NCBI RefSeq assembly: GCF_006345805.1
Contig: NW_021834428.1
Span: forward strand, 1-48,840
Length of the DNA: 48,840 bases
Source of the DNA: Octopus sinensis
Lineage: Eukaryota
Direction of reading: 5' to 3'
Shown here: piece after piece, positions 1,136 to 48,840 of the stretch
Layout: each line of letters begins with the position of its first letter
Position numbering within the stretch: the stretch's first letter is position 1
Notes under the pieces: generated by a model
Told to the model about the DNA's origin: nothing
The model's input: only the letters and a program-made list of their open reading frames with translations
Databases searched by the model: none
Translations under genes and position numbers: made by a program

Positions 1136-1154
1136 TAACCTCTCATTTTACATT

Positions 1155-1250
1155 AGGCTTTGGTCGGCCCGAGGCTATAGTAGAAGACACTTGCCCAAGG
1201 TGTCACGTGGTACGTTAGCGAGCTACTTACCACACAGCCACGCCTACGCC
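1155..1250 (-). mobile_element. SINE family A, internally deleted 5' part
   Basis: Reverse complement of GGCGTAGGCGTGGCTGTGTGGTAAGTAGC...CCTTGGGCAAGTGTCTTCTACTATAGCCTCGGGCCGACCAAAGCC, shared with many copies in the window. Confidence 0.85.
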
Positions 1251-1265
1251 TAAAAAATGTGTGAC

Positions 1266-1380
1266 GCTTACAGCACCTAGGTTTCCCAAGCGGTCACCCA
1301 TCTAAGTACTAACTAACTAGACTTGATGTTGCTTAACTTCGGTGATCGGACGAGAACCGGTGCTTTCAACGTGATATAGC
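1266..1380 (-). rRNA. 5S rRNA variant/pseudogene
   Basis: Reverse complement reads GCTATATCACGTTGAAAGCACCGGTTCTCGTCCGATCACCGAAGTTAAGCAACATC...TTAGTACTTAGATGGGTGACCGCTTGGGAAACCTAGGTGCTGTAAGC, i.e. metazoan 5S rRNA with a diverged 5' end and a 4-bp TTAG duplication. Confidence 0.9.
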
Positions 1381-1410
1381 TTCGGCACCATCTCATATAT
1401 TCCTGTATAT

Positions 1411-2010
1411 ATATTTCTTTACTACCCACAAGGGGCTAGACACAGAGGGGACAAACAAGGACAGACAAACGGATCAAGTCGCTTACACCGGCCCCAGTGC
1501 GTAACTGGTACCTAATTTATCGACCCCGAAAGGATGAAAGGCAAAGTCGACCTCGGCGGAATTTGAACTCAGAATGTAGCGGCAGACGAAATACCTATTT
1601 CTTTACTGCCCACAAGGGGCTAAACATAGAAGGGACAAACAAGGACAGACAAAGGGATTAAGTCGATTATATCGACCCCAGTGCGAAACTGGTACTTTAT
1701 TTATCGACCCCGAAAGGATGAAAGGCAAAGTCGACCTCGGCGGAATTTGAACTCAGAATGTAACGGCAGACGAAATACCTATTTCTTTACTACCCACAAG
1801 GGGCTAAACACAGAGGGGACAAACAAGGACAGACAAAGGGATAAAGTCGATTACATCGACCCCAGTGCGAAACTGGTACTTTATTTATCGACCCCGAAAG
1901 GATGAAAGGCAAAGTCGACCTCAGCGGAATTTGAACTCAGAACGTAGCGACAGACGAAATACGGTGACGCATTTCGCCCGGCGTGCTGACGTTTCTGCCA
2001 GCTCGCCGCC
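1411..2010 (-). mobile_element. SINE family B tandem array: one tRNA-like head plus three ~184-bp bodies
   Basis: Head GGCGGCGAGCTGGCAGAAACG at 2010; B-box GAGTTCAAATTCC; identical tail-to-body junctions at 1594 and 1778; CCTGTATATA on both flanks. Confidence 0.9.
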
Positions 2011-2368
2011 TACATGCCTGTATATAACCTATCACTGTAAAGTCTCTCAAACCATTTCCAGTGATACAGTTATATTAGAATTAGATTTAAATCAAGAGCG
2101 AAACGTGTAATATAATGGCTAAATCCATGTAATTCCTTAGCTTTACTGCAAAACCCAACACGATATTACAGTCATCCAGTATTGCTTTGTCAATTATTAA
2201 AACACCATTACGTGTTTGCCATGGAAAACGATATCGGGTTTGGTTGCGTGTAAGCTGCAAATACATCTGCATGTGTAACAAAAACGTTCGTGGGAATGCT
2301 TGTTCGGCCATTTCCTAAGACACTCTATAAGCGATCCAGAATGATTGGAATGTGGCTGCTTGGTGTGT

Positions 2369-2420
<52 letters not shown>

Positions 2421-2423
<3 letters not shown>

Positions 2424-2710
2424 GAGGCGCAATGGCCCAGTGGTTAGGGCAGCAGACTCGCGGTCGTAGGATCGCGGTTTCGATTCCCAGGCCGGGTGTT
2501 GTGAGTGTTTATTGAGCGAAAACACCTAAAGCTCCACGAGGCTCCGGCAGTGGGTGGTGGCGATCCCTGCTGTACTCTTTCGCCACAACTTCCTCTCACT
2601 CTTTCAGCGGAGTGGCGTCATTTGAAGGCTAAAACAATGCGAAGCGCATTGTGACCAGCGATGTGTAGCAACATCTGATAGCCTGGTCGGTCATGGTAAT
2701 CACGTGAGAT
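2421..2710 (+). mobile_element. SINE family C (tRNA-Arg-like head)
   Basis: GTGGAGGCGCAATGGCCCAGTGGTTAGGGCAGCAGACTCGCGGTC...GGTTTCGATTCCC A/B-box head; body shared with 3347 and 40470. Confidence 0.9.
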
Positions 2711-2904
2711 ATATATATATAGCTATTAATTCTGTGGAATTACTACTACAGCATAATGTGGTCAATTCTTTACATGGAATGCAGTGAGAAAAGCAACATG
2801 TTTACTGCCTATAATGTTGTAATATAAGGCTTGTTTCAATTGACAAAACCACCAGCTCCACAAAAAATTCTTGACGGTGTGTCAGTGTTAGTTCACAATC
2901 AAGT

Positions 2905-6841: not shown

Positions 6842-7101
6842 ACTCAGAACGTAATGGCAGACGAAATACCTATTTCTTTACTACCCACAATGAGCTAAAC
6901 ACAGAGAAGACAAACAAGGACAGACAAAGGGATTAAGTCGATTATATCGACCCCAGTGCGTAACGGGTACTTAATTTATCGACCCCGAAAGAATGAAAGG
7001 CAAAGTCGACCTCGGCGGAATTTGAACTCAGAACGTAACGGCAGACGAAATACCGCTAAACATTTCGCCCGGCGTGCTAACGTTTCTGCCAGCTCGCCGC
7101 C
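6842..7101 (-). mobile_element. SINE family B (head, one body and part of a second)
   Basis: Head ends at 7101; standard junction at 6869; followed by a remnant of a family A head (CTTACCACACAGCCACGCC). Confidence 0.9.
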
Positions 7102-7207
7102 TTCTTACCACACAGCCACGCCTGCATCTATGTAAGATATCAATATGTGTCAATGTATTTCCTTTCTATATCTCTTGTTATAAATCGTGATTAACTGCCT
7201 ATAAATG

Positions 7208-9985: not shown

Positions 9986-10543
9986 CTTTATACACACACA
10001 CACACATATATATACATATATACATACATACATAGAAAATTTGTGATTTTTGAGGTGCATATATATATATATATATACGCACACGTTGTTCAGTGTAAAC
10101 GTACCTCTTGTACACAATTAATTCTAAGCTTTGGTGGTTTATATAGAACCTCTCTGCGTGTCTGTGTGCGTGTTTGTTTGCTTGTGCACGCGTGTGTGCG
10201 TGCGTGCGTGTGCATGTGTGCGCATGCTTAAGCGTGCGTGTGAGTGTGCAGGTGTGCACGTATCTTACTCTCTATGTAGTCAGCTAGTTAAAAAAAGAAC
10301 GGGGGTTTGTTTAACAGAACGCTCGTGATCCCTTAAGATGAAAGGCTGATTCAAAACCTCAAGTTCGTAGAACACACGCATACACAGATATACGCAAACG
10401 CACTCATACACAAACACATACACTCCCGTGCGAATACACACATACACACACAGGTACACGCAAAGTTGTAAAGCCGTGTATCAACCGACACAGCAGATAT
10501 GAATGTCTGAGACCCTCAATTTTGTTGCTTTTGAACCGTGGCG

Positions 10544-11656
10544 ATGGAAATGAATTTCACAACAGTAGCGCCACAGACCGTGTCTTTCCACAATGGCAGC
10601 TACAATGAAACCCCGTTAGATTTCATGGAGACACGCATCGCTAGATTCATCAACCTCTACTACCCGCCTTTCCTTGTCCTCTTTGGTACAGTTTGTAACA
10701 TTCTTGTCGTAATTGTGATGACAAGTCGTTATTTCTCTTCCGTTTCCACCGCCATATACATGTTAGCCGGAGCTCTGGGAGACGTTCTTTGTTTCCTCAT
10801 AGCTTTGCCTGCTCACTGGGTTTATGTCAACTTCCCACATGCCGTCGAACGTACAGACGACGCACATTACATGTGTAAGTTTTTCAATTTCTTTGGCTGG
10901 GGAAGCAGTGACTTCGGGATTATTCTCACAGCAGCCATGGCGGCAGATAGAGCAATCGCCATTTTGTTTCCGTTCAAAGCTAATAGACTGTGTACGCCAC
11001 GACGCGCAAAGTCTGTAGTTATTGGATTACTTGTCGGCGTCAGTATCAAGGAGTCACACTTTCTGTTTGTGTCAGACATCGTGCCCGAATTCCGCAACGA
11101 CCGCTTGTGCACGGTCACGGAACCAAACGAGATTTACAGGTGGTTTTGGCGAGATATTTGGCCGTGGGTTCACACTGTCTTCCTTCTTATCTCCTTCATC
11201 ATCATCATCATGAGCAACATCGTCATTATATTTTACTACCGGAAATCAAAACGACTTCCGGTCAATCGTGAGATCCGAGGAGTATGCGAGAACTCTCGTA
11301 CGCGTCAAATCAGTACCATGCTACTGGTAGAATCGTTTGCCATAATCCTGCTCACGTTTCCATTTTGTATGCACACAGCGTTCACATCCCACAGACAATA
11401 CAACTTGGAAAGTCCGAGGGAGAAAGCCGAAAACCTGTTGCTCTTCTCCGTTGTCTTCTATCTTCTCTACACCAACAAATGTGCCACCTTCTGTCTCTAT
11501 TGCATCACGGGTTCGAGATTCAGGTATGCCCTCTGTGACATCTTTTGCCACGGACGGTTCACCCGGCGTACAGACAAGATACAGAGGGGGAAATGCTTAT
11601 CACACTCGCATTTCTCCATGAACCACATGGCCGTACACCTACACAACCCACCCTAA
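10544..11656 (+). CDS. Intronless class A (rhodopsin-like) GPCR, FMRFamide/sex-peptide-receptor-like orphan peptide-receptor type, 370 aa
   Basis: Uninterrupted ORF with ATG in a strong context (GCGATGG); N-terminal N-glycosylation sequons NFT, NGS, NET; seven hydrophobic segments; TM1 GTVCNILV, TM2 ALGD, TM3 MCKF...AADRAIAI, ECL2 Cys (RLCTV), TM6 LTFP, TM7 YTNKCATFCLYCITGSRFR. Confidence 0.93.
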   Translation: MEMNFTTVAPQTVSFHNGSYNETPLDFMETRIARFINLYYPPFLVLFGTVCNILVVIVMTSRYFSSVSTAIYMLAGALGDVLCFLIALPAHWVYVNFPHAVERTDDAHYMCKFFNFFGWGSSDFGIILTAAMAADRAIAILFPFKANRLCTPRRAKSVVIGLLVGVSIKESHFLFVSDIVPEFRNDRLCTVTEPNEIYRWFWRDIWPWVHTVFLLISFIIIIMSNIVIIFYYRKSKRLPVNREIRGVCENSRTRQISTMLLVESFAIILLTFPFCMHTAFTSHRQYNLESPREKAENLLLFSVVFYLLYTNKCATFCLYCITGSRFRYALCDIFCHGRFTRRTDKIQRGKCLSHSHFSMNHMAVHLHNPP

Positions 11657-18851: not shown

Positions 18852-19612
18852 AAGGCGGCGAGCTGGCAGAACCGTTAGCACGCGGGGCGAAATGCTTAGC
18901 GGTATTTCGTCTGCTGCTACGTTCTGGGGTCAAATTCCGCCGAGGTTGACTTTGCCTTTCATCCTTTCAGGGTCGATAAATTAAGTACCAGTTTCGCACT
19001 GGGGTCGATGTAATTGACTTAATCACTTTGTATGTCCTCGTTTGTCCCCTCTGTATCTAGACCCTTGTGGGTAGTAAAGAAACAGGTATTTCGTCTGTCT
19101 TCACATTCTGAGTTCAAATTCCGCCGAGGTCGACTTTGCCTTTCATCCTTTCGGGATCGATAAATTAAGTACCAGTTTCGCACTGGGGTCGCTGTAATCC
19201 CTTTGTATGTCCCTTTGTAGCCCCTTGTGGGTAGTAAAGAAACAGGTATTTCGTTTGTCTTCACATTCTGAGTTCAAATTCCGCCGAGGTCGACTTTGCC
19301 TTTCATCCTTTCAGGGTCGATAAATTAAGTACCAGTTACGCACTGGGGTCGATGTAATCGACTTAATCCCTTTGTATATCCTTGTTTGTCCTCTCTGGGT
19401 TTAGCCCCTTGTGGGTAGTAAAGAAATAGGTATTTCGTCTGTCTTCACATTCTGAGTTCAAATTCCGCCGAGGTCGACTTTGCCTTTCATCCTTTCGGGG
19501 TCGATTAAATAAGTACCAGTTACGCACTGGGGTCGATATAATCGACTTTATCCGTTTGTCTGTCCTCGTTTGTCCTTTCTGTGCTTAGCCCCTTATGGGT
19601 AGTAAAGAAATA
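18852..19612 (+). mobile_element. SINE family B tandem array: head plus four bodies
   Basis: Junctions GAAA(C/T)AG-GTATTTCG at 19085, 19245 and 19429; body 2 is internally deleted. Confidence 0.92.
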
Positions 19613-20289
19613 GAATATTAAATTTGTTTCTTTTCTATTTTTGGTCTTCCAAAATCGGGATAAGTCTGAGAAAGGAGCCGCGGGAGGTGGAGTAGCTGCT
19701 CCAGCGAGTGTCGTTGACCATTCTCTGCGACAACGCCATCGTAGTCATGACCCCAGGAGGCAGCTGTTTTCGCTATTTATTCTGGGGCGTGTGGCCCCTG
19801 TCCCCCTCTCCCTACAACTTCTGCTGTTTTACCCCCGCTACCTTATTACTTCTTCTGTCTCTGTGTTTCCTTGTAATATGAATAAAGTGTACTTTATTTT
19901 TAACAAAAAAACGTAAGGATTTGTTTAACGCGCAGTGCATCATCTACACCGGTAAATTCAGTATATGTCAAAGTTTCGGCTGGAGCGATGTGTAGTATTA
20001 GGTCTGGTGTCGGTTAACAATTAGATTAGAGTCACTAATGCAGGTGTTATAACAGAGTTATCCCCCTTACATCAGACTACTACAAGCAAGAAGTGATGGA
20101 ATGAATTGAAATTCTAGATTAGAGGAAACGCATTCTTTCTCTCACTCTCTCTCATTATTTCTCTCTTCTACATGTACACTTACACATACACACACACACA
20201 CGTAATATTCTTATACTTGAGGATAGTGATATTTTACCAATTAAACACAGCAGCAATACGCTTAATTGTTCGAGACGATTGGCAGGACG

Positions 20290-20843
20290 CAGCTCAAGAA
20301 TGACTTCGTTGCCTAACTCGGTCGCATGCCGCGACTCTCGGTAAAGGCGGTGGAGCATTGCGAAATACCTATTTCTTTATTACCCACAAGGGGCTAAACA
20401 CAGAGGGGACAAACAAGGACAGACAAAGAGATTAAGTCGATTACATCGACCCCAGTGCGTAATTGGTACTTAATTTATCGACCCCGAAAGGATGAAAGGC
20501 AAAGTCGACCTCGGCGGAATTTGAACTCACAACGTAACGCAGACGAAATACCGCTAAGCATTTCGCCCGGCGTGCTAACGTTTCTGCCAGCTCACCGCCT
20601 TAAATTGCGAAATACCGATAAGAGCCGCAGAAGTACGGGAGGCGTGATGGGTTGCGCTTTGTGTGTGTATGTGGGGGTGGGGTTCGAGTTTTCTATGCCC
20701 GATATCAACTTCTGTAAGTTGAGAAACGGTGGTACTGCTGAGAAAGGACCCAAACAAGGAGGATCAAATCGAAAACTTTAGACCAGTAACGCTGCTGAAC
20801 GCAAATTCCAAAATTTTAGCCAAGGTGTTAGCAAAGAGGTTGC
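20290..20843 (+). mobile_element. Tx1/L1-like ORF2 reverse transcriptase fragment (interrupted by a SINE B copy)
   Basis: Removing the SINE restores GRMPRLSVKAVEHCEIPIRAAEVREA; downstream VVLLRKDPNKEDQIENFRPVTLLNANSKILAKVLAKRL matches the L1/Tx1 N(W/F)RPISLLN.D.KILAK.LA.RL motif. Confidence 0.8.
20370..20603 (-). mobile_element. SINE family B, single copy with 13-bp TSD
   Basis: ATTGCGAAATACC at 20357-20369 and 20604-20616. Confidence 0.93.
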
Positions 20844-21565
20844 TCACCTTTCTCTTCCTTCTCGTTGAGGTCGACACCTCAACGACTTCCTCCGTTTCTC
20901 CCTGCAATGGGAGAGCGGAGGGCACCTTCCCCTTTTCCTGCTCCGGAGCCTTACCACGGCCCCGGAGGCAGTCCTTCTTGACATAGCCTGACTCCCAGCA
21001 CGACTGACACTTGGTGGGGGTGGGGGTGGGGGTGATTCTCCAGAATCACTGGATACCTGGAGCCAGCCATCCTCAAAATGTCGGGGAAGGTCATTTTACC
21101 TGCGACCACTGGGGTCCACAGGGTCAAAATTGCCTTTGTACCCTCCCAGTTGACCACAAGCGTCACTCTTACATTTAAGAGCCTGGACCCGCTATCCCCC
21201 AGGCCCCGTCGGACGGTATCTTCTATCCAACCCGCCTCTATGCCCGGGGGTAGCCCACATACCCAGGCTCTTATCACCTTCCTCCCGCAGTACGACGGGA
21301 GGAACAAAATTTCCTTTCCCTCCAAAGGCTGACTTGCAAAATTGCAAGCCTCCTCCGTGGTGTCGAACAGCAACCACACCGTTGCATGCCTGACACCCCG
21401 GGATATATATTTTCCAAGGGACAAATAGTATTTTAGTTCTTTTTCAATGGTTTGTTTTGGGAAGACGGTGGTGGTATCAAGAACTTTAGAGTAAGTTCTA
21501 ACCACCACCGTCCTCTCCTCCATATCTTTTAACCACTGCTTGGGTGGGACAATCTCCCACTCCAA
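20844..21565 (-). mobile_element. Tx1/L1-like ORF1 (gag-like) pseudogene with a zinc knuckle
   Basis: 204-aa ORF; after a frameshift in a (CCCCAC)n run the second frame reads KCQSCWESGYVKKDC (CCHC knuckle, H to Y), followed by a basic stretch RRKRK. Confidence 0.65.
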
Positions 21566-21738
21566 AGCAGTGGTTTTATTTTTATCATTTTATTTGCCAT
21601 GTCAATAAAACACAGTTCAAACAAGGAAAAACGTCACTCAACCAAAAACAACAAAATAAACACAATAAAAATAAATACACAGTTCAACTAAAATTGGAAG
21701 AAAAAAATACTAGTCCAACTAAAATTGTTCAACAAAAG

Positions 21739-22679
21739 TGTGGTGTATGCGGGAGATTTGAAATAAGGACACCTACCTTCTCTTCGTCGACGGAGACTTC
21801 TCCAGTGGTAATGCCCCCTTCCACACGGCCCGATCCGAACACTAGAAATAGCAGCTGCTTTTCCCCTACCTTAACAAAGCGCTCACACGTCCAACTCTCT
21901 CGACTACCTCGATCGAAAAGGCCCAATGCTGCCCTCCCTGCGCGCGCGTCACTCCTACCCCTTCATCTTCCGGTCAGCCCCAAGTTCCGGTCAGCTCCCC
22001 AGCTGCCGATGTCATCCCAAACGCCACCCTGATCTTAAAGATCCCATTCTCTCTACTCCATGTCGTAGTCCACCATCCAACCGGGAGGGCGCCTTGCACG
22101 TCGAGATCTTCTTAGGCTAGGCACCTCGTTCTCCCCCTCTCCACAATCGTCGTCCGACGAGCGACAATCCTGCGAAGGTCCAAGACATGTCCCGCCATTC
22201 CATCTACGGAGACGTTGTTTCTGGAATTGACCGCCGTCACCGTTCCTCTGCTCCATTGAGATGTACAGCGCGCCTTCGGTGGCTTAACAATGCCCGTTCT
22301 CAACTCCCTCCAAATGGCCAGCCGCCCCGCCCGCAGTCGACCATGGAGAGATACATTCCCTGACGGTGGTGCGTCACATCCACAGCTAGCCTATTCCAGT
22401 TGTGCTCCACCGAAAGGTTTCCTTGCTCATGCCCACACGGAGCAGGGTCAATGGACTGACACCTGTCGCAGCTCCCGACCACTTTCCGGATGCTTCTCCT
22501 AGTAACATCAGCATCAATTCTCTTCGCCAGATACAGGGTCCTGTCCACACCCAAGTGATGCATAGCATGTAGTCTCTTCAGTTCGGAGTCATCCAACCGA
22601 CACGCCGCAGCTATCCCTTTCTGTGCCTCCTCCGGTTCCTCCAACCGATCAGCTCCCCAGCTGCTGACGTCATCTCACA
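21739..22679 (-). mobile_element. Gypsy-like LTR retrotransposon deletion derivative (941 bp)
   Basis: TG...CA termini and 5-bp TSD AAAAG (21734-21738, 22680-22684); 3' LTR 21739-22021; 5' LTR remnant 22645-22679 matching 21987-22021; integrase HHCC (LHAMHHLG...CDRC), start of core (RLAVDVTH, SMVDCG), C-terminal VKPP..RCT..W and LRRSRR..RPP; decayed polypurine tract at 22022-22035. Confidence 0.88.
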
Positions 22680-23920
22680 AAAAGGAAAGAAAAGACATCA
22701 GTTCAGAAAAATAAATAAATATTGTACAATCCTCCACGGCAGAAAATAAAATTTTCGATCTACACGGTATTCCCAGCTCACTTGTAGCCTCCAAATCTCT
22801 TGATAATCCTTCTGGTAAAGTACTTCCAACGTTTCCGGGTTCAAAACCACGCACAGCTTGCAAGCACCAATTTTTTCCTCAATAACTGTAGTGAAAATAT
22901 TCACATTGAAGTTCTTCACTTGCTTGTTAACAAGCACAATCACAACACCGCCAAGAGTAAGCGAAAATGCCCCAGAGCTGGGCAGAATATACTTAGGAAT
23001 GAGAACCCAGGTTCGAAATTTCCCCAAGACACCTGGAGAAGGCTGGAGGGTATATCAGCTGAAACGTGTTAACAACAAACAAGATGAGGACAAATATCCG
23101 TCAAATATAAATAATGTAAATAATATAAATAATGTTCTTCTATGATATTCAACTCAGAAACAACAAAACCGCTTACCTTGACGGCAACCTTTTTCTTAAT
23201 CCAAACTGGTAATCCACAAATGGTAAAGACAATTTTCACAGCCAACAAAGTTTTGCGGAGGGGATACGCCTCCTCAAAAACAATTCTTACTGCAAAGTGA
23301 GTCTTTTCGCACGACCACAGGCAGGTAAATGTCTGGAGTAGAGTGGAGACTGTTGCTCAACAAAAAATTATTAATAACAGAACAACAAAAACTCCACTAG
23401 GCCCCCCCAAAATAAAACAAACGCCTACCTGTAGTCGAGCTTCGAACGTTCAATATTTCACGTCGAAAGACGTGGCTTCCAAGTAGCATCCAAATCCGAA
23501 CTCTTCTGTCAAGTAAGATAAGCAAGCTAGTTACCAAAATCAGATTGTATTGTCCCCTCTTTGTTGGCCCCTTGTGGGTAATAAAAAATTCACTTCAACG
23601 CCTACTGGCTTCAATATTTGTAACATGGCTTCAATTTTATTATATTTATTATTTTATATTTTATTATATTTTCGTATTTGTGTGAAATTTTGAACGTCAT
23701 CTTTTTTGTATAATCATTCGTTCATCTTACCCTAAAATCAGATTGTATTGTCCCCTCTTTGTTGGCCCTTGTAGGTAATAAAAAAAATCTACTTCTAGGC
23801 CTACTGGCTTCAATACTTGTAACATGGTTTCAGTAGTTGTAACGCAGGCATTGTCCGACATTTCTTATTCCTTGAACAAATTCGTAGGGTGTAGAACATC
23901 ATTCGTATAGAAAATAGACC

Positions 23921-24310
23921 GTGGCTTTGCGATAAGAAGTTTGCTTCCCAACCATATGGTTCCGGGTTCAGTCCCACTGTGTGGCACCTTGAGCAAGTGT
24001 CTTCTACAATAACCTCGGGTCGACCAAAACCTTGTGAGTGGATTTGGTAGACAGAAACTGAAAGAAGCCCGTCGTATATACGTTGTGAATGTGTACATAT
24101 CTTTGTGTCTGTATTTGTGTCCCACCGCCTCTTGACAACTGGTGTTGGTGTGTTAGGTCCCCTTAACTTAGCGGTTCGGCAAAAGAGGCTTGTAGTACAA
24201 GTACTAGGTTGAAAAAGAAATAAGCTCTGAGGTCAATTTGTTCAACTAAAAATCCTTCAAGGCGGTGCTCCAGTATGGCCGCAGTCAAACGCCTGAAAAG
24301 ATAAAAATAA
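23921..24310 (+). mobile_element. SINE family A, near full length
   Basis: Head, CORE-like body, GGCGGTGCTCCAGTATGGCCGCAGTC tail. Confidence 0.88.
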
Positions 24311-24431
24311 AAGATAAAAGATATCTGCTCGTGAAAAATAAATATATAAATATATAAGACAAAAGAGATACGAATATCAAGGAAGAACATTATTTACCAC
24401 ACAGCCACTCCTACGCCTATATAAAATAACT

Positions 24432-24658
24432 ATTTCTTTATTACCCACAAGGAGCTAAACATAGAGGAGACAAACAAGGACAGACGTAGGTATTAAGTCG
24501 ATTATATCGACCCCAGTGCGTAACTGGTACTTAATTTATCGACCCCGAAAGGATGAAAGGCAAAGTCGACCTCGGGTGAATTTGAACTCAGAACGTAACG
24601 GCAGACGAAATACCGCTAAACATTTCGCCCGGCTTGCTAACGATTCTGCCATCTCGCC
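24432..24658 (-). mobile_element. SINE family B, single copy with 14-bp TSD
   Basis: TATATAAAATAACT at 24418-24431 and 24659-24672. Confidence 0.9.
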
Positions 24659-24765
24659 TATATAAAATAACTTTTAATTCTTTGATATTATATCTTATAA
24701 GCTTACTTTACATTTGTTACTATATCACAACAGGGGCGATACGATATCGTACGCGATTTAAAATA

Positions 24766-25191
24766 TATATTTCTTTACTGCCCACAAGGGGCTACACACA
24801 GAGGGGACAAACAAGGACAGACAAACGGATTAAGTCGAAGCACGCCGGGTGAAACGCGTAGCCGTATTTCGTCTGCCGTGAAGTGTTCTGGGTTCAAATT
24901 ACGCCGAGGTCGACTTTGCCTTTCATCCTTTCGGGGTCGATAAATTAAGTACCAGTTACGCACTGCGGTCCCTTTGTCTGTCCTTGTTTGTCCCCTCTAT
25001 GTTTAGCCCCTTGAGGGTAGTAAAGAAATATATATCGACGCCAGTGCGTAACTGGTACTTAATTTATCGACCCCGAAAGGATTAAAGGCAAAGTCGACCT
25101 CGGCGGAATTTGAACTCAGAACGTAACGGCAGACGAAATACGGCTACGCATTTCGCCCGGCGTGCTAACGCTTCTGCCAGCTCGCCGCCTT
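24766..25191. mobile_element. SINE family B (minus) with an antisense family B copy (24839-25030, plus) nested inside it
   Basis: Tail 24766-24838 and head part 25033-25191 are on the minus strand, split at the GTCGA...TCGAC palindrome. Confidence 0.85.
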
Positions 25192-25404: not shown

Positions 25405-25741
25405 TCTTATTTACTTCAGTCATTAAACAGCGGCCATGCTGGAGCACCGCCTCGAGAAAGTTTTAGCCGAATAAATCGACTGTAGTAGCTTTTCTTTTTT
25501 CTTTTAAACCTGGTGATTATTTTTCGGTCTGTTCTGCCGAACCTCAACTACAGGGCCGTAAACACACCAACAGGGTTGTCAGTCGGTAGTGGGACACGTG
25601 TGTGTGTGTGTGTGTGTGTGTGAGAGACGGGGGCTTCTTTCAGTTACCATCTATCAAGTCCACTCACAAAGCTTTGGTCGGCCCGAAGCTAAGGCGCCAT
25701 GTAGTGAGACTGAATCCTGAACCAAGCTTCTTACCACACAG
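25405..25741 (-). mobile_element. SINE family A, diverged
   Basis: GCGGCCATGCTGGAGCACCGCC tail and CTTCTTACCACACAG head on the reverse strand. Confidence 0.8.
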
Positions 25742-28444: not shown

Positions 28445-29215
28445 ACAGTGGCACCTTGGGTCACTGTCTTCTGCTATGACCTCAGGCCAACCAAAGACTT
28501 GTGGGATCTTTTCGGTTTGAACGGCAGTATTTTTAAAATAATTTCCACGTAACTAAACACTTTTAAACTTCGTATACTGCTAGAATGTGTTTATAAAACA
28601 TCTTTTTCTCTTGGCTTTATTGAGAAAATTCTATAGTTTGTAAGATATTTGTTGGGTTTTTTTCTTCAATTTCTGCAATTTCAACCAATCAATGACGTCT
28701 ATTGAGGTGAAAATATTCTGTACCGTATGAATATGTCCCTCGTTTAAGAAACAGATTGGATTTATTTACATTTCGAAAGAAAAAAAGATACCCTTCCCCC
28801 CACTCCTAACCCTAACTAACCCTAACCCTAACCCTAAAACAGATTGAAATGCAATAGATCGATACTAGGGTCACAATTATGGGTGACAATTTCATATGAC
28901 ACCGCTAGAAAAAAACTGCCGTTCAAACCGAAAAGCTCCGACTTGTGAATAGATTTGGTAGACAGAGACTGAAAGAAGCCTGTCTTCTTTGTGTGTGTCT
29001 GTGTCTTTGTGCCTGTGTTTGTTCCCCACCAGCACCGTGTGAAAACCAGTACTGGTGGGTTTACATCCCCGTAACTTAGCGGTTTGGTAAAAGAGACCGT
29101 TAGAATAAGTACCAAACTTTAAAGAAAATAAATACTGCAGTCGACACATTCGAGTAAAGCTTCTTCAAGGCAATGCGCCAGTCTAATGACTGAAGCAAGT
29201 AAAAAATAAATAAAT
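28445..29215 (+). mobile_element. SINE family A split by a MITE insertion
   Basis: Family A body resumes after the MITE (GACTTGTG duplicated). Confidence 0.8.
28504..28939 (-). mobile_element. Merlin-like MITE, second copy in opposite orientation
   Basis: Same TIRs; 8-bp TSD GACTTGTG at 28496-28503 and 28940-28947; (CCCTAA)n at ~28805-28836. Confidence 0.88.
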
Positions 29216-29288: not shown

Positions 29289-29676
29289 ACTAGCAGTATC
29301 GCCCGGCGTTGCTCGGGTTTGTAAGGGAAATAACTATATAAGCATTTTTAGAGAGTTATAGCCAAAGAATAGCAAAAAAATGCATTAAAAATGGAAAAAA
29401 ATGATGGTAAATTTTTTTTTAAATCGTTGACTCATCGTAGACATTTTTAGAGAGTTACTTCCCTTATATAATAGCGAAAAAATGCATTAAAATGGAAAAA
29501 ATGATGGTAAATTTTTTTTTAAATCGTAGACTCATCGTAGACGCGCGCTAATACCCAGAAGGGCTCGATATGAATCACGACTATAAGATACCCGGTTTTG
29601 GTTAAACTGCACCGCAAAATGTGGGAGTAGTTAGGAATCTAAATCGTAGGAGACAGACACACAACCTCACTTTTAT
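29289..29676 (+). mobile_element. Non-autonomous Helitron/Helentron-like element
   Basis: 5' ACTAG followed by the hairpin CCCGGCGTTGCTCGGG; internal ~110-bp tandem duplication; 3' CAGACAC...CTTTTAT end as in DINE-1/HINE-type elements. Confidence 0.55.
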
Positions 29677-29922
29677 AATCGACTTAATCCGTTTGTCTGT
29701 CCTTATTTGGAACCTCTATGTTTAGCCCCTTGTGGGCAATAAAGAAATATATTTATCACACAATGCTATATTTGAAATATTAAGAATAGCATCAATCCCT
29801 CATGGGTGGGACACTCAATAACTGGTTCAGGAGCATCCGGTGGTGCAGTTGTATCTCGTCGAATGATAAATAGATGGAATTCGTCAGAATAACAGTTCCG
29901 TAATGTAGCTTCTCGTTTTGTA

Positions 29923-30489
29923 TTGGGTTGTCCGGAAAGTTCGTGCCGATTTATAGTAGCTTACCTTTCGACATATTTTAGAACATGGTTGAATCCATAA
30001 AATAGGATTTGACTACACCTCCATTTAGAGCACAGTTTAAGCTATCTTTCCGTGGAAGAAGGTTTATGTTCCTATAACCTGTGTTAATTTTGTAACCATT
30101 TAAAACGGAAGATAAGAAAGTTCATTTTTGGCACTTGATGCTTTGGGAACCAGACAAAAATTGCTGCAGCTCGGCTGGGATGTGTTACCCTACCTTCCAT
30201 ATTCACCAGATGTTGCTCCTTCGGATTTCCACTTATTCAGGTCTCTGCAGAATAGTCTTAATGGTAAAAATTTCAGTTCCTTGGATGACGTAAAAAGATA
30301 CCTTGATGAATTCTTTGCCATGAAACCACCTCAATTCTGAGAAGAGGGTATTTTTCAAGTTAAAGGAAAGATGGAGACGCATTGTGCAACAAAATGGTTC
30401 ATATTTGGTTGATTAGAAATGTAATGGCAAGTATTTATTGACCTTTTTCTTTCCTTCAAAAATCGGCAAGAACTTTCCGGACAATCCAA
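29923..30489 (+). mobile_element. mariner (D,D34D) internal-deletion derivative
   Basis: ~30-bp TIRs TTGGGTTGTCCGGAAAGTTCGTGCCGATTT / AAATCGGCAAGAACTTTCCGGACAATCCAA with TA TSD; N-terminal EDKKVHF.HLML fused to C-terminal LGWDVLPYLPYSPDVAPSDFHLFRSLQNSL. Confidence 0.93.
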
Positions 30490-30516
30490 TAGAAAGAAAA
30501 ACAGCCAGACGGAGGA

Positions 30517-30848
30517 AAGTACTTATTCTATCGGTCTCTTTTGCCGAACCGCTAAGTTACGGGGACCTAAACACACCAGCATCGATTGTCAAGCGATGTT
30601 GGGGGGGACAAACAGATACACAACATACACACACATATATATATATATACACACACACACATACACACACACATATATATATATACGACGGGCTTCTTTC
30701 AGTTTCCGTCTACCAAATCCACTCACAAGGCTTTGGTCGGCCCGAGGCTATAGCAGAAGACACTTGCCCAAGGAGCCATGCAGTGGGACCGAACCCAGAG
30801 TAGTGTGACTAAGAAGCAAGCTTCTTACCACACAGCCCCTCCTACGCC
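30517..30848 (-). mobile_element. SINE family A
   Basis: Reverse-strand match to the family A head and body. Confidence 0.88.
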
Positions 30849-32413: not shown

Positions 32414-33012
32414 AAGGCGGCGAGCTGGCAGACACGTTAGCACGCCGGGCGAAATGCGTAGCCGTATTTCGTCTGCCGTTACGCTCTGAGTTCAAATTCC
32501 GCCGAGGTTGACTTTGCCTTTCATCCTTTCGGGGTCGATTAATTAAGTACCAGTTGCGCACTGGGGTCCAAGTAATCGACTTAATCCGTTTGTCTGTCCT
32601 TGTTTGTCCCCTCTATGTTTAGCCCTTTGTGGGTAGTAAAGAAATACGCATTTCCTCTGCCGCTACGTTCTGAGTTCAAATTCCGCCGAGTTTGACTTTG
32701 CCTTTCATGCTTTCGTGGTCGATAAATTAAGTACCAGTTACGCATTAGGGTCGATATAATCGACTTAATCCGTTTGTCTGTCCTTGTTAGTCCCCTCTGT
32801 GTTTAGCCCCTTGTGGGTAGTAAAGAAATAGGTATTTCGTCTGCCGTTACGTTCTGAGTTCAAATTCCGCCGAGGTCGGCTTTGCCTTTCATCCTTTCGA
32901 GGTCGATAAATTAAGTACCAGTTACGCACTGGGGTCGATATAATCAACTTAATCCGTTTGTCTGTCCTTGTTTGTCCCCTCTGTGTGTAGCCCCTTGTGG
33001 GTAGTAAAGAAA
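32414..33012 (+). mobile_element. SINE family B tandem array: head plus three bodies, followed by a related B' copy to ~33195
   Basis: Junctions at ~32646 and 32831. Confidence 0.92.
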
Positions 33013-33247
33013 TGAGAAATGCTTAGCAGTATTTCGTCTGTCTTTATGTTTTGAGTCCCAATTCCGCCGAGGTCGACTTTGTCTGTCACCCTTTCGTGAT
33101 CGATATATTAAGTACCAGTTGCGTGTTGGAATCGATCTAATCGACTGACCCCTCCCCCTAAATTTCGGGCCTTGTGCCTAGATTAGAAATGAATTATCTG
33201 TAGTTATCTGTCTGTATCTATCAGTACAGCTTGAATGCTTCTCATCA

Positions 33248-38659: not shown

Positions 38660-39066
38660 TCTTTACTCTCTTTTACTCTTTTACTTGTTTCAGTCATTTG
38701 ACTGCGGCTATGCTGGAGCACCGCCTTTAGTCGAGCAAATCGACCCCAGGACTTATTCTTTGGAAGCCTAGTACTTATTCTATTGGTTCTCTTTTGCTGA
38801 ACCGCTAAGTTACGGGGATGCAAACACACCAGCATCGGTTGTCAAGCGATGTTGGGGGGACAAACACAGACACACAAACACACACACATATATATATATA
38901 TATACATATATACGACGGGTTTCTTTCAGTTTCCGTCAACCAAATCCACTCACAAGGATTTGGTCGGCCCGAGGCTATAGTAGAAGACACTTGTCCAAGG
39001 TGCCACGCAGTGGGACTGGACCCGGAACCATGTGGTTAGTAAGCAAGCTACTTACCACACAGCCAC
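38660..39066 (-). mobile_element. SINE family A, full length
   Basis: Complete reverse-strand copy with (CTTTTACT)n tail. Confidence 0.92.
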
Positions 39067-39208
39067 ACCAGCTGAAATCAATAAATTCTCAATTTGGTGA
39101 TGCTTCTCTCGTTGTCGGAGAAGAAACAGAAACTTAACGGTTATAACTGTCAATGATTGTGAATGAAAAAGGGATATAATTTCAAGAAATTAATAATAAT
39201 CTGCTTGA

Positions 39209-39387
39209 GGGCGGCGAGCTGGGAGAGTCGTTAGAAGGCCGAGCATTTCGTCCGTCTTTACGTTCCGAGTTCAAATTCCATCGAGGTCAACTTTGCCTTT
39301 CGAGGTTGGGGGCTAGATAAAATAAGTACTAGTTGAGTACAGGGGTTGAGGTAATCGGTTTGCACCCTCCTCCAAATTGCAGGCCTC
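39209..39387 (+). mobile_element. SINE family B' (related head, different tail)
   Basis: GGCGGCGAGCTGGGAG head; CCCTCCTCCAAATTGCAGGCC tail. Confidence 0.75.
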
Positions 39388-39433
39388 AACCTCGGCAACA
39401 TTTGAACTCAGAACGAAAAGCTGGACTAGATAT

Positions 39434-39850
39434 CTATTTCTTTACTACCCACAAGGGGCTAAACACAGAGAGGACTAACAAGGACAGACTAACGGATTAA
39501 GTCGATGATATCGACGCCAGTGTGTAACTGGTACTTAATTTATCAACCCCGAAAGGAATAAAGGCAAAGTCAACCTCGGCGGAATTTGAACTCAGAACGT
39601 AGCGGCAGACGAAATACCTATTTCTTTACTACCCACAAAGGGCTAAACACAGAGGGGACGAACAAGGACAGACAAACGGATTAAGTCTTTGATTACTTTG
39701 ACCCCAGTGCGTAACTGGTACTTAATTTATCGACCGAAATGGTGAGAGGCAAAGTCAACCTCGGCGGAATTTGAACTCAGAACGTAACGGCAAACGAAAT
39801 ACGGTTAAGCATCGCCCGGTGTGCTAACGATTCTGTCAGCTTGTCGCCTT
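39434..39850 (-). mobile_element. SINE family B (head plus two bodies) inserted into an older B/B' head, 15-bp TSD
   Basis: AAGCTGGACTAGATA at 39418-39432 and 39851-39865; host head 39851-39914, host continuation 39388-39433. Confidence 0.92.
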
Positions 39851-40205
39851 AAGCTGGACTAGATACCGCTAAGCACTTTATCCGGCACGGTAATGATTCT
39901 GCCATTTCTACCGCCCCCAAAGAAACTAATAATCATAATTTCACTTTTGAATCAACATGTTTAGATGTGGGGCAGAACCTCGACTGGATTTTGTTTCAGA
40001 GACTGGGAGCGGTTATAGACTCGCTTCAGCGTTAGTCTGGTCTCATGAAAACTGTGTAGTCTTGTTCGTTTCCGAACAGATAAGAAACAGACAGCATAGC
40101 ATAGGCAAAAAGAGTCGTGAATATTAAATTTCATAGTGAAAAAGAAAGGAACCAGTAGTGTGAATATGTTTGTGTTTGTGTGTGTATGTTCAGTTAAAAA
40201 ATAAA

Positions 40206-40989: not shown

Positions 40990-41029
<40 letters not shown>

Positions 41030-41073
41030 ATCTCTTTATCTTTTATCTTTACTTGTATCAGTAATCTGTCTGC

Positions 41074-41206
41074 TGGGTTCAGTCCCACTGCGTGGCATCT
41101 TGGGCAAGTGTCTTCTACTATAGCCTCGGGCCTACCAAAGCCTTGTGAGTGGATTTGGTAGACGGAAACTGAAACAAGCCCGTCGTATATATCTATATGT
41201 GCGTGT

Positions 41207-41245
<39 letters not shown>

Positions 41246-41470
41246 TGTGTGTCTGTGTTGCCCCCCCCCAACATCGCTTGACAACCGATGCTGGTGTGTT
41301 TACGTCCCCGTAACTTAGCGGTTCGGCAAAAGAGACGGATAGAATAAGTACTGGGCTTACAAAGAATAAGTCCTGGGGTCGATTTGCTCGACTAAAAGAC
41401 TGTGCTCCAGCATGGCCACAGTCAAATGACTGAAACAAGTAAAAGAGTAAAAAGAGAGTAAAGAGTAAAG
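41074..41470 (+). mobile_element. SINE family A, 5'-truncated
   Basis: Body and tail match. Confidence 0.88.
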
Positions 41471-43973: not shown

Positions 43974-44515
43974 TGTCAACATTATGGAATAACAACAGAA
44001 AAAAGATGGTATAGGCACACACCAGACAAGGTCACAGAAAACGAGAAAGCAACCATACTCTGGGATATGCCAATACACACAGATAGAGAAAATAAGGTCA
44101 ACAGACCAGATATAGTTGTCAGAGATCATGAAGAAAAAAAATGCTTTCTAATTGATGTATCAATACCAGCAGAAGACAACGTTTCTCTAAAAGAAATGGA
44201 GAAACTTTCAAAATACAAAGACCTGGAAATAGAGGTAACTAGAATGTGGAATCTAAAAACAGAAACAATTCCTATCATAGTAGGTGCATTAGGCATGATA
44301 AAAAATATTCAGACAAATACATAACAAAAACACCAGGACTTACATACACATATAACATACAGAAAATTGCACTACTAGGCACTGCATACATCCTATGCAG
44401 AACACTTTCAATACAGTAACCATCAGAGCATCACAACAAATCACAGCACATACCCAAGGCACACAGAGCTGCAGTCGGTAGTGAAGTGAAAGCACGATAT
44501 ATAAAAAAACTACTG
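43974..44515 (+). mobile_element. 5'-truncated R4/Dong-like LINE with RLE domain and intact 3' end, inside (TAA)n
   Basis: Open frame CQHYGITTEKRWYRH.P..V.ENEKATILWDMPIHTDRE...RPDIVV...FLIDVSIP...KLSKYKDLEIEV.RMW...PIIVGALG; TAA tracts on both sides. Confidence 0.88.
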
Positions 44516-44560
44516 AATAATAATAATAATAATATTAATAATAATAATAATAATAATAAT

Positions 44561-44830
44561 AGCAGCCAATGTACGCCACTAGCTCAGAAGGAATATAAAA
44601 GTCGCCACGACAATATAGCCAGGATTGTCCATTGGACACTTTGTAACAAGTATGGACTTCACAAAGCAAAATATTGGTACGACCACAAACCTGAAGGCAT
44701 CGTCGGAAATGGAAATGTAAAGATCCTATGGGATTTTATGATTCAGTGCGACCATGAGATAGAGAATAGGAAGCCGGACATAGTCTTAACTGAGAAAGAA
44801 AACAAACTATGCTGGTTCATAGATATATGA
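44561..44830 (+). mobile_element. Second, divergent R4/Dong-like RLE fragment following (TAA)n
   Basis: CTPLAQKEYKSRHDNIARIVHW.LC..YG...WYDHKP...KILWDF.IQ.D..I..RKPDIV...CWFIDI. Confidence 0.85.
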
Positions 44831-44951
44831 TTTTGCCAATGAAAGGACTACGGCCATATTAGACACCATTTTGAAGGGTTTAAGTTCAATGCTTATTTAT
44901 CAGTATGGGTAATTAATTGCATGTAGCTAATAAAGTCTTAATTGATGCATA

Positions 44952-45132
44952 GGCGTAGGAGTGGCTGTGTGGTTAGTAGCTTGCTTACGAACCACATAGT
45001 TCCGGGTTCCGGGTTCAGTCCCACTGCATGGCACTTTGGGCAAGTGTCTTCTATAGCCTCGGGCCGACCAAAGCCTTGTGAGTGGATTTGGCAGATGGAA
45101 ACTGAAAGAAGCCCGTCGTATATATATGTATA

Positions 45133-45200
<68 letters not shown>

Positions 45201-45430
45201 GTGTGTGTGTGTGTGCGTGCGTGTGTGTGTGTCTGTGTTTGTCCCCCCAACATCGTTTGACAATCGATGCTGGTGTGTTTACGTCCCCGTAACTTAGCGG
45301 TTTGGCAAAAGAGACCGATAGAAAAAGTACTAGGCTTACAAAGAATAAGTCCTGGAGTCGATTTGTTTGACTAAAAGCGGTGCTCCAGCATGGCCACAGT
45401 CAAATGACTGGAACAAGTAAAAGAGTAAGG
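44952..45430 (+). mobile_element. SINE family A, full length
   Basis: GGCGTAGGAGTGGCTGTGTGG head through AAGTAAAAGAG tail, with an internal TA/GT microsatellite. Confidence 0.92.
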
Positions 45431-47984: not shown

Positions 47985-48319
47985 GTTTGTGCTGGTTTTA
48001 AGGTTTTACGGTTAGGGTTTTAGAGTTAGGGTTAGGGTTGTCATAAATAACAGTGACAAACGAAATATACACCACCGGAAGTTCTTGTTGACAAACAACG
48101 GCAGTAATTTTATTCAGCTGAATACACGTCATTGATTGGTTGAAATTACCGAAATACGAGAACTTTAAGGTGAAATAACTTCGTAAATATAATTTTTTCT
48201 CAAAAATGCTAAGAGTAAAAGATGTTTTATATGACAGATTCTACCAGTGTCTGAAGTTTGAAAGGTGTTTAGTTACAAAAAATTATTTTTTAAATATGTA
48301 GGTCAAAAGGTAAAGATCC
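47985..48319 (+). mobile_element. Diverged relative of the Merlin-like MITE (right end only)
   Basis: TTAGGG repeats, CGTCATTGATTGGTTGAAA core and AAAGATCC terminus shared with 16778. Confidence 0.6.
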
Positions 48320-48606: not shown

Positions 48607-48840
48607 GGATCTTTTCGGTTTGAACGGCAGTTTTTTCTAGCGGTGTCATATGAAATTGTCACCCATAATTATGACTATAGTATCAATCTGTTTTAGGTTT
48701 AGGGTTAGTTAGAGTTAGTTAGGGTTAGGGATGGGGGAAAGGGTATCTTTTTTTCTTCACAAATGTAAATAAACCCAATCTGTTTCTTAAACGAGGGACA
48801 TATTCATACGGCACAGAATGTTTTTTTACCTCAATAGACG
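48607..48840 (+). mobile_element. Merlin-like MITE, third copy, cut by the window end
   Basis: Left TIR GGATCTTTTCGGTTTGAACGGCAG and a body nearly identical to 16778. Confidence 0.88.

What the first reader, a model, noticed from the sequence alone, without database searches (positions are those of the whole stretch)
39388..39914. SINE family B caught inserting into its own family's head at a fixed site (15-bp TSD)
Seen: a complete head+body+body copy (39434-39850) splits an older B/B' copy and duplicates AAGCTGGACTAGATA. On the element strand the target reads CTTAGCG^GTATCTAGTCCAGCTT, which is the same position (just after CTTAGC in the tRNA-derived head) where every internal array junction lies. 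Established: target-primed reverse transcription creates TSDs, and several Tx1-clade LINEs are sequence-specific for multicopy targets such as tRNA clusters, snRNAs, 5S and other transposons. Inference: this SINE is mobilised by a site-preferring endonuclease whose target lies inside the SINE itself, making it a self-targeting, self-concatenating retroposon. I do not know whether this has been described for octopus SINEs.
Basis: partly seen in the sequence, partly recalled or inferred. Interest (0 to 1): 0.82.

Follow-up and report, generated by a model that had tools for sequence, protein, structure and literature searches.

The report
Octopus SINE nested inside its relative
A short mobile element in an octopus genome has copied itself into an older relative at a TAT-starting spot of the kind this family usually lands in, so the nested insertion is real but ordinary, and the idea that the element aims at itself is only weakly supported.

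Summary
A full-length copy (48-nt head plus two 184-nt units, 39433-39850, minus strand) is flanked by an exact 15-bp duplication. It splits a diverged older 5' region of the same family between consensus positions 51 and 52, one base from the head/unit and unit/unit junction.

The window is contig VCDQ01005145.1 of assembly GCA_006345805.1, which I recall as Octopus sinensis. Six other copies in the window are missing from the orthologous O. bimaculoides locus, so these are real retroposon insertions.

The self-targeting interpretation is only partly supported. At least 10 of 12 terminal 3' junctions abut a target starting (N)TAT, with duplications of 7-16 bp in unrelated DNA. The 234-nt consensus has just two TAT sites, and nested copies hit both.

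Units within an array are similar in age, and first units of two arrays at different loci are sisters, so arrays appear to move as multi-unit elements.

One oddity remains. A second copy (20361-20601) sits at the same point of a 14/15 match to the head motif, in DNA otherwise unlike the family.

Under a weight-matrix null, two hits in 11 events gives P = 0.03. Leaving out the discovery event gives P = 0.2. A genome-wide count is needed.

The parts
39851..39865 (-). Target-site duplication, copy at the 5' side of the inserted element. Reads TATCTAGTCCAGCTT on the element strand, equal to consensus positions 52-66 of the host copy.
   Evidence: Exact 15-bp repeat (family D5). Abuts the element start AAGGCGAC.
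39418..39432 (-). Target-site duplication, copy at the 3' side of the inserted element.
   Evidence: Preceded by ...GTAAAGAAATAG plus A.
39803..39850 (-). Head of the inserted copy (48 nt, AAGGCGACAAGCTGACAGAATCG...GCTTAACC).
   Evidence: Aligned with seven other heads of the family in the window.
39618..39802 (-). Unit 1 of the inserted copy (GTATTTCG...AAATAG). Carries the B-box-like GAGTTCAAATTCC.
   Evidence: Sister to the first unit of the array at 32464-32647 (94/90 support).
39433..39617 (-). Unit 2 of the inserted copy, plus one extra A at 39433.
39866..39915 (-). Older, diverged copy of the family: head part, consensus positions 3-51, ending ...GTGCTTAGCGG.
   Evidence: Local alignment of the rebuilt empty site to the consensus, score 95 against shuffles 19.6 +/- 3.2.
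39386..39417 (-). Older copy, continuation after the duplicated segment (consensus about 67-98). It then ends against a convergent relative.
   Evidence: inverted repeats I1-I3.
39209..39388 (+). Its head lacks about 15 nt of the junction region and its 3' end is truncated.
20361..20601 (-). Second copy (c5, head plus one unit) lying at the same motif. Its 12-bp duplication ATTGCGAAATAC is at 20357-20368 and 20604-20615. The flank at 20608-20622 reads CTTATCGGTATTTCG on the element strand.
   Evidence: Absent from the O. bimaculoides ortholog.
24839..25030 (+). 5'-truncated copy inserted in inverted orientation into another copy (24761-25191, minus strand), at the unit's only other TAT site (GATATAATCG).
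   Evidence: The outer copy's empty site is seen in L007.
1412..2011 (-). Array copy c1 (head plus 3 units), flanked by a 15-bp duplication with two mismatches (TATATACAGGCATAT). Comparison copy.
   Evidence: Intact empty site in the O. bimaculoides ortholog.
32414..33193 (+). Array copy c10 (head plus 3 units), joined to a 5'-truncated short-tail relative. Source-related to the inserted copy.

Best explanation
The feature is an ordinary nested retroposition. An RNA of a two-unit member of an abundant octopus SINE family (head plus 184-nt units, no TTTT run, tail ...GTAAAGAAATAG) was reverse-transcribed at a nick in an older, roughly 76%-identical relative. The staggered second nick gave a 15-bp duplication.

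Shown: the family's insertions start at targets of the form (N)TAT(T/C/A).

Inferred: this preference is the joint product of a loosely specific, AP-type LINE endonuclease and a few bases of pairing between the RNA 3' end and the nicked target. In multi-unit RNAs the 3' end continues AAAUAG-GUAUUU.

The element's own GTATTTCG, just after the head, is one of only two TAT sites in its 234-nt consensus. A copy that lands in a relative will therefore usually land there or at the other site.

The array junction AAATAG|GTATTTCG looks like a normal 3' insertion junction. It probably dates from one or a few founding events, and was then inherited because multi-unit elements are copied whole and also duplicate locally.
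For: 1. Exact 15-bp duplication and a full-length insert.
2. The host is a family member.
3. Copies c1, c2, c4, c5, c6 and c7 are all absent from the orthologous O. bimaculoides locus L007. Intact single-copy empty sites are seen for c1, c6 and c7.
4. At least 10 of 12 terminal 3' junctions in three octopus species abut a target beginning TAT or NTAT. The TAT frequency is 3.7% per position. By my own arithmetic the binomial P is of order 1e-10.
5. Duplications are 7-16 bp long.
6. The consensus holds two TAT sites, at positions 52 and 158. Both carry nested copies: c13 and c7-inner.
7. c2 ends 28 nt into a second unit, so multi-unit RNA templates exist.
8. c10.1 and c13.1 are sisters across loci, with 94/90 support. 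Units within an array have near-equal identity to the consensus: c1 96/96/95, c4 91/91/93/93, c8 95/95/93.
9. [quoted passage not shown] Fixed nested-insertion hotspots of a SINE in its own family are described for Alu (PMC2836564).
Against: c5 lies at exactly the same point of a 14/15 match to the head motif. That match is the only one in the window outside recognisable heads (12 matches, 0.05 expected by chance).

With c13 this makes two hits in 11 events. A weight matrix built from the other targets gives these sites 2.4% of the weight, so P = 0.028. This hints at extra affinity for the family's own junction.

The near-identity of the nested break point and the array junction is what a self-insertion origin of arrays predicts.

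The partner LINE was not found, so the endonuclease type is inferred only.

The sample is about 49 kb of this species plus about 180 kb from two congeners.
Confidence: 0.62

Rival explanations
1. Soft self-homing. Multi-unit or read-through RNAs end in ...AAAUAG-GUAUUUCG. That extension pairs over 6-8 bases with the same sequence in resident copies. The family's own head/unit and unit/unit junctions are then hit several-fold more often than other TAT sites. When the target is nearly identical, the 5' end of the cDNA is resolved on the homologous duplicated segment. One unit is added with no visible duplication, so arrays grow. When the target has diverged, as here, a full-length copy with a duplication results.
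For: - c13 and c5 both lie at G^GTAT(T/C)T... of head-like sequence.
- P = 0.028 for two hits in 11 events under the weight-matrix null.
- The array junction equals the nested break point to within one base.
- c2 shows that RNAs extending into a next unit are used as templates.
- 25 of the 72 GTATTT sites in the window lie inside family copies.
Against: - Without the discovery event, one hit in 10 gives P = 0.22.
- Units of one array are the same age, rather than a mix of old and young.
- Cross-locus sister units show that arrays are copied as arrays.
- The adjacent-unit clusters (c8.1/c8.2; c4.2-4.4) fit local duplication as well.
- No head interrupted at this site was seen among about 45 heads outside the window copy.
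Confidence: 0.2
2. The partner LINE has a sequence-specific endonuclease (Tx1-like) that recognises CTTAGCG^GTATTTCG. The SINE is then a dedicated self-targeting, self-concatenating element.
For: - c13 and c5 share 6-7 matching bases upstream of the nick as well as downstream.
- Tx1-type LINEs are among the recently active LINEs in the sister species O. vulgaris (PMC13282606).
Against: - Ten other datable insertions are in unrelated DNA with no upstream similarity to the motif.
- Duplication length varies from 7 to 16 bp.
- One insertion deleted about 190 bp of target.
- The second nested copy is at a different site.
- Short-tail relatives instead pile up behind each other's tails.
- The upstream matches in c13 and c5 are expected if both targets are simply head-derived DNA.
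Confidence: 0.08
3. The structure is not an insertion. It arose by recombination, by gene conversion between neighbouring copies, or by misassembly of a repeat-rich contig.
For: - The locus is a mosaic: a convergent relative abuts the host copy.
- The contig is a small unplaced piece of 48,840 bp.
- Two segments of the window are inverted relative to O. bimaculoides.
Against: - The duplicated 15-mer is specific to the diverged host (GTATCTAGTCCAGCTT against the family's GTATTTCGTCTGCCGT). It brackets precisely consensus position 1 and the normal 3' end.
- The insert's units differ from each other by about 10% and from all other copies. A collapse or chimera of reads is therefore unlikely.
Confidence: 0.03

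Closest known systems
Alu-in-Alu insertion hotspot (Levy, Schwartz and Ast 2010, PMC2836564)
   Same: A SINE inserts into older members of its own family at a fixed position. This is explained by the integration machinery's motif preference. Nested copies are used to read that preference.
   Different: The Alu work rests on hundreds of thousands of events and an L1 TT/AAAA-type target with poly(A) pairing. Here there are two events, a TAT-type target and no poly(A) tail.
Tail-dependent ('stringent') SINEs of the CR1/L2/RTE type, with 3'-end/target microhomology (Nishiyama and Ohshima 2018, PMC6007223, and works cited there)
   Same: No poly(A). A short specific tail. Duplications of variable length. 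The first bases of the duplication mirror the sequence at or after the RNA 3' end. There is an overlap of one to several bases at the 3' junction.
   Different: The split T-stretch signature of RTE-related SINEs was not examined. The partner LINE and its clade are unknown here.
Octopus tRNA-derived SINEs of Ohshima and Okada 1994. OR2 is counted among CORE-SINEs (cited in PMC4758252).
   Same: Octopus host. B-box-like GAGTTCAAATTCC followed by a central region. From memory of the MIR/CORE consensus, that region resembles the CORE domain (...TTTCATCCTTTCGGGGTCGATAAATTAAGTACCAG).
   Different: No OR1, OR2 or OK sequence was available to align, so identity with OR2 is untested. Tandem 184-nt body units are not, to my knowledge, part of the published description.
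Sequence-specific Tx1-clade LINEs (Tx1L, Keno, Kibi, Dewa and others).
   Same: The target is a multicopy sequence, and insertion is at one defined nucleotide.
   Different: Those elements sit almost exclusively in their target. This family is mostly in unrelated DNA that shares only TAT.
Microsatellite-tail targeting, as in Dong/R4-type LINEs and tail-to-head SINE clusters
   Same: Short-tail relatives in O. bimaculoides and O. vulgaris form head-to-tail runs of whole elements. New copies start right after an older copy's tail. This is self-family targeting through a short AT-rich site.
   Different: In those clusters each member keeps its head. The 184-nt arrays repeat the body only.

Membership tests
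SINE (LINE-mobilised, pol III-type short retroposon) | Flanking target-site duplications of variable length | tested here: met
   15 bp (c13), 15 bp with two mismatches (c1), 12 bp (c5, c6), 7 bp (c7), and 11, 11 and 16 bp in L001 and L006.
SINE (LINE-mobilised, pol III-type short retroposon) | Presence/absence at orthologous loci, with an intact empty site | tested here: met
   c1, c6 and c7 show single-copy empty sites in O. bimaculoides L007. c2, c4 and c5 are also absent there. c13 itself could not be tested because L007 ends near window position 25,600.
SINE (LINE-mobilised, pol III-type short retroposon) | Head derived from tRNA, with internal A and B boxes | tested here: inconclusive
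   ARAGORN finds nothing, even at relaxed settings, and Rfam finds no tRNA hit at E <= 10. B-box-like GAGTTCAAATTCC and A-box-like TAGCACGCCGGG are visible. There is no TTTT in the 234-nt consensus.
SINE (LINE-mobilised, pol III-type short retroposon) | 3' tail shared with a partner LINE | tested here: inconclusive
   A tail-only match at 23552-23588 and LINE scraps at 20723-20983 and 43974-44830 were seen, but none links an RT gene to the ...GTAAAGAAATAG tail.
Sequence-specific (Tx1-like) retroposon | Nearly all copies lie in one target sequence | tested here: not met
   Of 29 full-length 5' ends, one lies in a head and one at a head-like 15-mer. Three or four lie behind tails of relatives, and the rest are in unrelated DNA.
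Sequence-specific (Tx1-like) retroposon | Fixed duplication or deletion length at the target | tested here: not met
   Duplications are 7-16 bp, and one insertion carries a target deletion of about 190 bp.
Sequence-specific (Tx1-like) retroposon | Partner LINE of the Tx1 clade with the same target | not testable with these tools
   No octopus genome could be searched by DNA. Only loci reachable through protein look-ups were available.
CORE-SINE (OR2-like) | Conserved CORE domain after the tRNA-related part | not tested
   The resemblance is recalled from memory only. No reference CORE or OR2 sequence was at hand. OR2 is listed as an octopus CORE-SINE in PMC4758252.

The most novel reading that the evidence does not exclude
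The family homes to its own GTATTTCG junction. Its multi-unit RNAs end in the same sequence and pair with it. On near-identical targets the event adds exactly one 184-nt unit and leaves no scar. The SINE would then build tandem arrays, potential satellite seeds, by retroposition rather than by unequal crossing-over. c13 and c5 would be the visible failures, on diverged targets.
Probability: 0.2. Interest if true: 0.6.

Novelty: new member of a known kind. Interest (0 to 1): 0.3.

Why it matters
SINEs make up about 11.6% of the sister genome O. vulgaris, and most families there are unclassified (PMC13282606). A family whose body is repeated in 184-nt units, and whose preferred target recurs at that repeat boundary, is a convenient system for two questions. 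How do RNA 3' ends and nick-site choice shape where SINEs land? How do SINE bodies turn into tandem arrays?

As it stands, the finding documents a target preference ((N)TAT) and a nested-insertion hotspot of the kind already known for Alu. It would matter more only if genome-wide counts show true self-homing.

Tried and rejected
1. More copies through proteins. A SINE-derived open frame found one O. bimaculoides protein, which gave locus L001. A family-A-derived frame gave four O. vulgaris loci. These hold mostly short-tail relatives and only three long-tail copies.
2. L002 (another cephalopod) has no family copies. L008 (Argonauta) has no flank homology.
3. A metagenome scan for the B-box 21-mer found nothing.
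4. The O. sinensis protein P0004 was not on record.
5. The O. bimaculoides ortholog L007 stops near window position 25,600. The c13 empty site could not be checked.
6. tRNA detection on the head failed.
7. The search for the partner LINE failed. The integrase-like hit at 22303-22674 is below Pfam's cutoff. The RT-like scrap at 20723-20983 is about 40 residues long.
8. I tried to explain the c5 flank as a decayed full copy, as 5' transduction from a nested source, or as ancestral sequence. The flanks do not align to the family. The ortholog shows TTCGCAAT is ancestral but breaks there. This is left unexplained.
9. The 9-bp 'duplication' around c10 lies in ATCT/GTCT low-complexity DNA, so I treated it as doubtful.
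10. Literature searches found no description of self-targeting or tandem-unit octopus SINEs.

Full report
**What is in the sequence**

On the minus strand, 39850-39433 is a complete member of a repeat family. It begins AAGGCGACAAGCTG... with a 48-nt head. Two units of 184/185 nt follow, each running GTATTTCG...GTAAAGAAATAG. The 15-mer AAGCTGGACTAGATA lies immediately outside both ends, at 39418-39432 and 39851-39865, and nowhere else nearby (family D5).

I removed the insert and one repeat copy. The joined flanks then align to the family consensus (built) over positions 3-98. The score is 95, against 19.6 +/- 3.2 for 500 shuffles, at about 76% identity. The host is therefore an older, diverged 5' region of the same family.

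The break lies after ...GCTTAGCGG, between consensus positions 51 and 52. The head/unit boundary and all unit/unit boundaries are ...GCTTAGCG|GTATTTCG and ...AAATAG|GTATTTCG, between positions 50 and 51.

The head's tRNA origin is not confirmed. ARAGORN and Rfam find nothing. Only box-like motifs and the absence of any TTTT run speak for a pol III element.

**Where the window comes from**

The window's GPCR gene (10538-11656) is carried by record VCDQ01005145.1 of assembly GCA_006345805.1, a contig of exactly 48,840 bp. From memory this is the Octopus sinensis assembly. The gene's 90% cluster includes the O. bimaculoides protein XP_014776909.1.

Fetching that gene gave L007, the O. bimaculoides ortholog of window positions about 344-25,600, at 84-92% DNA identity. 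Further loci came from O. bimaculoides (L001, 76 kb) and O. vulgaris (L003-L006, 4 x 20 kb).

**These are real insertions**

The window holds five arrays with a 184-nt period, plus single-unit copies. None of c1 (1412-2011), c2 (6842-7103), c4 (18852-19614), c5 (20361-20601), c6 (24424-24654) or c7 (24761-25191) is present in L007. For c1, c6 and c7 the ortholog shows the intact single-copy target. This fixes their duplications at 15 bp (two mismatches), 12 bp and 7 bp.

c2 replaced about 190 bp of a family-A SINE that is intact in L007. Its 3' end lies 28 nt inside a second unit. RNAs longer than one unit therefore serve as templates.

**The family's general target**

I listed every terminal 3' junction of long-tail copies in all loci, together with their duplications. 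The targets begin as follows:

| Copy | Target start |
|---|---|
| c1 | TATATACAGG |
| c5 | GTATTTCGCAAT |
| c6 | TTATTTTATATA |
| c7 outer | ATATTTT |
| c7 inner | TATATCGAC |
| c4 (homology with L007 starts here) | TATTAAAT |
| c13 | (A/G)TATCTAGTCC |
| L006 | ATATTAAATAA |
| L006 | ATATTGCTGTCATCAT |
| L001 | TATAAGGCCTA |
| 29674-29754 fragment | ATATTTATC |
| c8 (the exception) | TAAAGG |

At least 10 of 12 start with TAT or NTAT. TAT occupies 3.7% of positions in the window. By my own arithmetic the binomial probability is of order 1e-10.

Duplications run from 7 to 16 bp. This is the behaviour of a loosely specific AP-type LINE endonuclease with a few bases of RNA/target overlap. [quoted passage not shown] It is not the behaviour of a sequence-specific element.

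The consensus contains only two TAT sites, at position 52 (GGTATTTCG) and at position 158 (GATATAATC). c13 sits at the first. The other family-in-family insertion in the window, c7 inner (24839-25030), is inverted and 5'-truncated, and sits at the second. Given the general preference, a nested copy had about an even chance of landing at the junction site.

**Are the array junctions independent self-insertions?**

In the identity matrix, units of one array are almost equally distant from the consensus: c1 96/96/95, c4 91/91/93/93, c8 95/95/93, c10 95/95/97, c13 95/94. Serial additions over time would mix old and young units.

In a maximum-likelihood tree, the first unit of c13 is sister to the first unit of c10 at another locus (94/90). 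c8.1/c8.2 (98/93) and c4.2-4.4 (87/90) cluster within their arrays. The second units of c10 and c13 share two private variants but are not resolved.

Together with c2, this says that multi-unit elements are retroposed as such and also duplicate locally. The shared junction is therefore largely inherited.

Its form, AAATAG|GTATTT, is that of a normal 3' junction on a TAT target. A founding self-insertion is one possible origin. Slippage between the two GTATTTCG repeats that such an insertion creates (as in c5), or an RT template switch, would all fit. The data cannot separate them.

**The observation that resists**

c5 has a 12-bp duplication (element strand GTATTTCGCAAT). The 7 nt upstream of its 5' copy read CTTATCG. 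The target was therefore CTTATCG^GTATTTCG, a 14/15 match to the head motif, cut at the same place as in c13.

It is the only match with two or fewer mismatches outside recognisable heads (12 matches in the window, 0.05 expected). Nothing else around it aligns to the family.

The ortholog retains TTCGCAAT and then diverges. Window 20365-24658 (c5, a short RT-like scrap, a family-A SINE and c6) is replaced there by 149 nt ending in poly(A). A head-derived scrap apparently abutted the ancestral site before c5 arrived. I could not work out how.

Counting it, two of 11 long-tail insertions in the window are at this site. A weight matrix from the other targets gives junction-like sites 2.4% of the total weight. 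This yields P = 0.028 for two or more of 11. It yields P = 0.22 for one or more of 10, once the event that prompted the finding is set aside. That is suggestive, not decisive.

**Relatives behave similarly at another site**

New copies start directly after an older copy's AT-rich tail: L001 65980-66640, and L003 10790-12040. Three or four of the 29 full-length 5' ends surveyed are of this kind.

Self-family clustering through short AT-rich sites is thus common here. This again points to motif and microhomology rather than to a dedicated recognition sequence.

**Comparison with what is known**

Nested-insertion hotspots of a SINE within its own family are established for Alu (PMC2836564). Tx1-type, CR1, RTE and Dong-R4 LINEs are all recently active in O. 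vulgaris (PMC13282606). The partner therefore remains open.

Octopus OR2 is listed as a CORE-SINE (PMC4758252). From memory the central region here resembles the CORE domain, but I had no reference sequence to test that.

I found no paper describing tandem-unit octopus SINEs or self-targeting. The library does not hold the 1994 description.

**Verdict**

The nested insertion and its duplication are real, and the positional coincidence is real. The best-supported mechanism is ordinary target-primed reverse transcription at a TAT-type target that happens to occur at the element's own head/unit boundary. Arrays are propagated as multi-unit elements.

A modest extra affinity for the family's own junction remains possible, at about 0.2. 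It could arise through pairing of a GUAUUUCG-ending RNA. It would be the interesting outcome.

A strict sequence-specific endonuclease is unlikely, at about 0.08. The decisive test is the genome-wide target logo and nested-position count, which these tools could not run.

Noticed in passing
window 1268-1387 (-): Full-length 5S rRNA match (Rfam 74.5 bits), followed by T6 and then a family-A SINE. The O. bimaculoides ortholog shares only the first few bases, and no 5S is found in L007. This looks like a lineage-specific 5S retro-copy or a 5S-headed SINE. Array c1 ends 25 nt upstream of it.
   Followed up: partly
window 20604-20622 (flank of c5): A 15-nt scrap, 14/15 identical to the family's head/unit junction, lies in otherwise unrelated DNA at the edge of a 4.3-kb lineage-specific block. 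A new copy is inserted at exactly the junction point. The scrap's origin is unexplained.
   Followed up: yes
window 6842-7103 (-): Copy c2 ends 28 nt into a second unit, then runs into (TA)n. It replaced about 190 bp of a family-A SINE that is intact in O. bimaculoides. The 5' join has AAG microhomology.
   Followed up: yes
window 24761-25191: A 5'-truncated copy is inserted upside down in another copy at GATATAATCG, without a duplication. The outer copy's empty site is present in L007.
   Followed up: yes
window 32414-33193 (+): Head plus 3 units joined (...AAAGAAAT|GAGAAATGCTTAGC...) to a 5'-truncated short-tail relative with a different 3' end. This is either an adjacent insertion or a template switch. 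The apparent 9-bp duplication lies in low-complexity DNA.
   Followed up: partly
L001 65980-66640; L003 10790-12040: Head-to-tail runs of three to six whole short-tail relatives. Each starts right after the previous tail, some with (ATT)n tails.
   Followed up: partly
window 43974-44830 (+): Two scraps of a retroelement C-terminal coding region, each bordered by (AAT)n/(ATA)n runs. This suggests a LINE with an (AAT)n tail inserting into (AAT)n microsatellites. Pfam gave no hit.
   Followed up: partly
window 344-2903 and 19616-20195: Both segments are inverted relative to the O. bimaculoides ortholog L007. The second inversion ends at the 3' edge of array c4.
   Followed up: no
window 47998-48033, 48699-48728, 28805-28837; L001 about 69650: Short interstitial TTAGGG/CCTAAC runs. 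In L001 a short-tail copy is followed directly by (TTAGGG)n.
   Followed up: no
window 10538-11656 (+): Intronless rhodopsin-family GPCR gene (7tm_1). At least 90% identical to O. bimaculoides XP_014776909.1, 'growth hormone secretagogue receptor type 1-like'.
   Followed up: partly
window, many sites (e.g. 23813-24232, 30417-30800, 38772-39134, 40996-41391, 44941-45399): A second abundant SINE (family A, head GGCGTGGCTGTGTGGTAAG...) with an internal microsatellite. It yields long spurious open frames, some of which are annotated as hypothetical proteins in O. vulgaris.
   Followed up: partly
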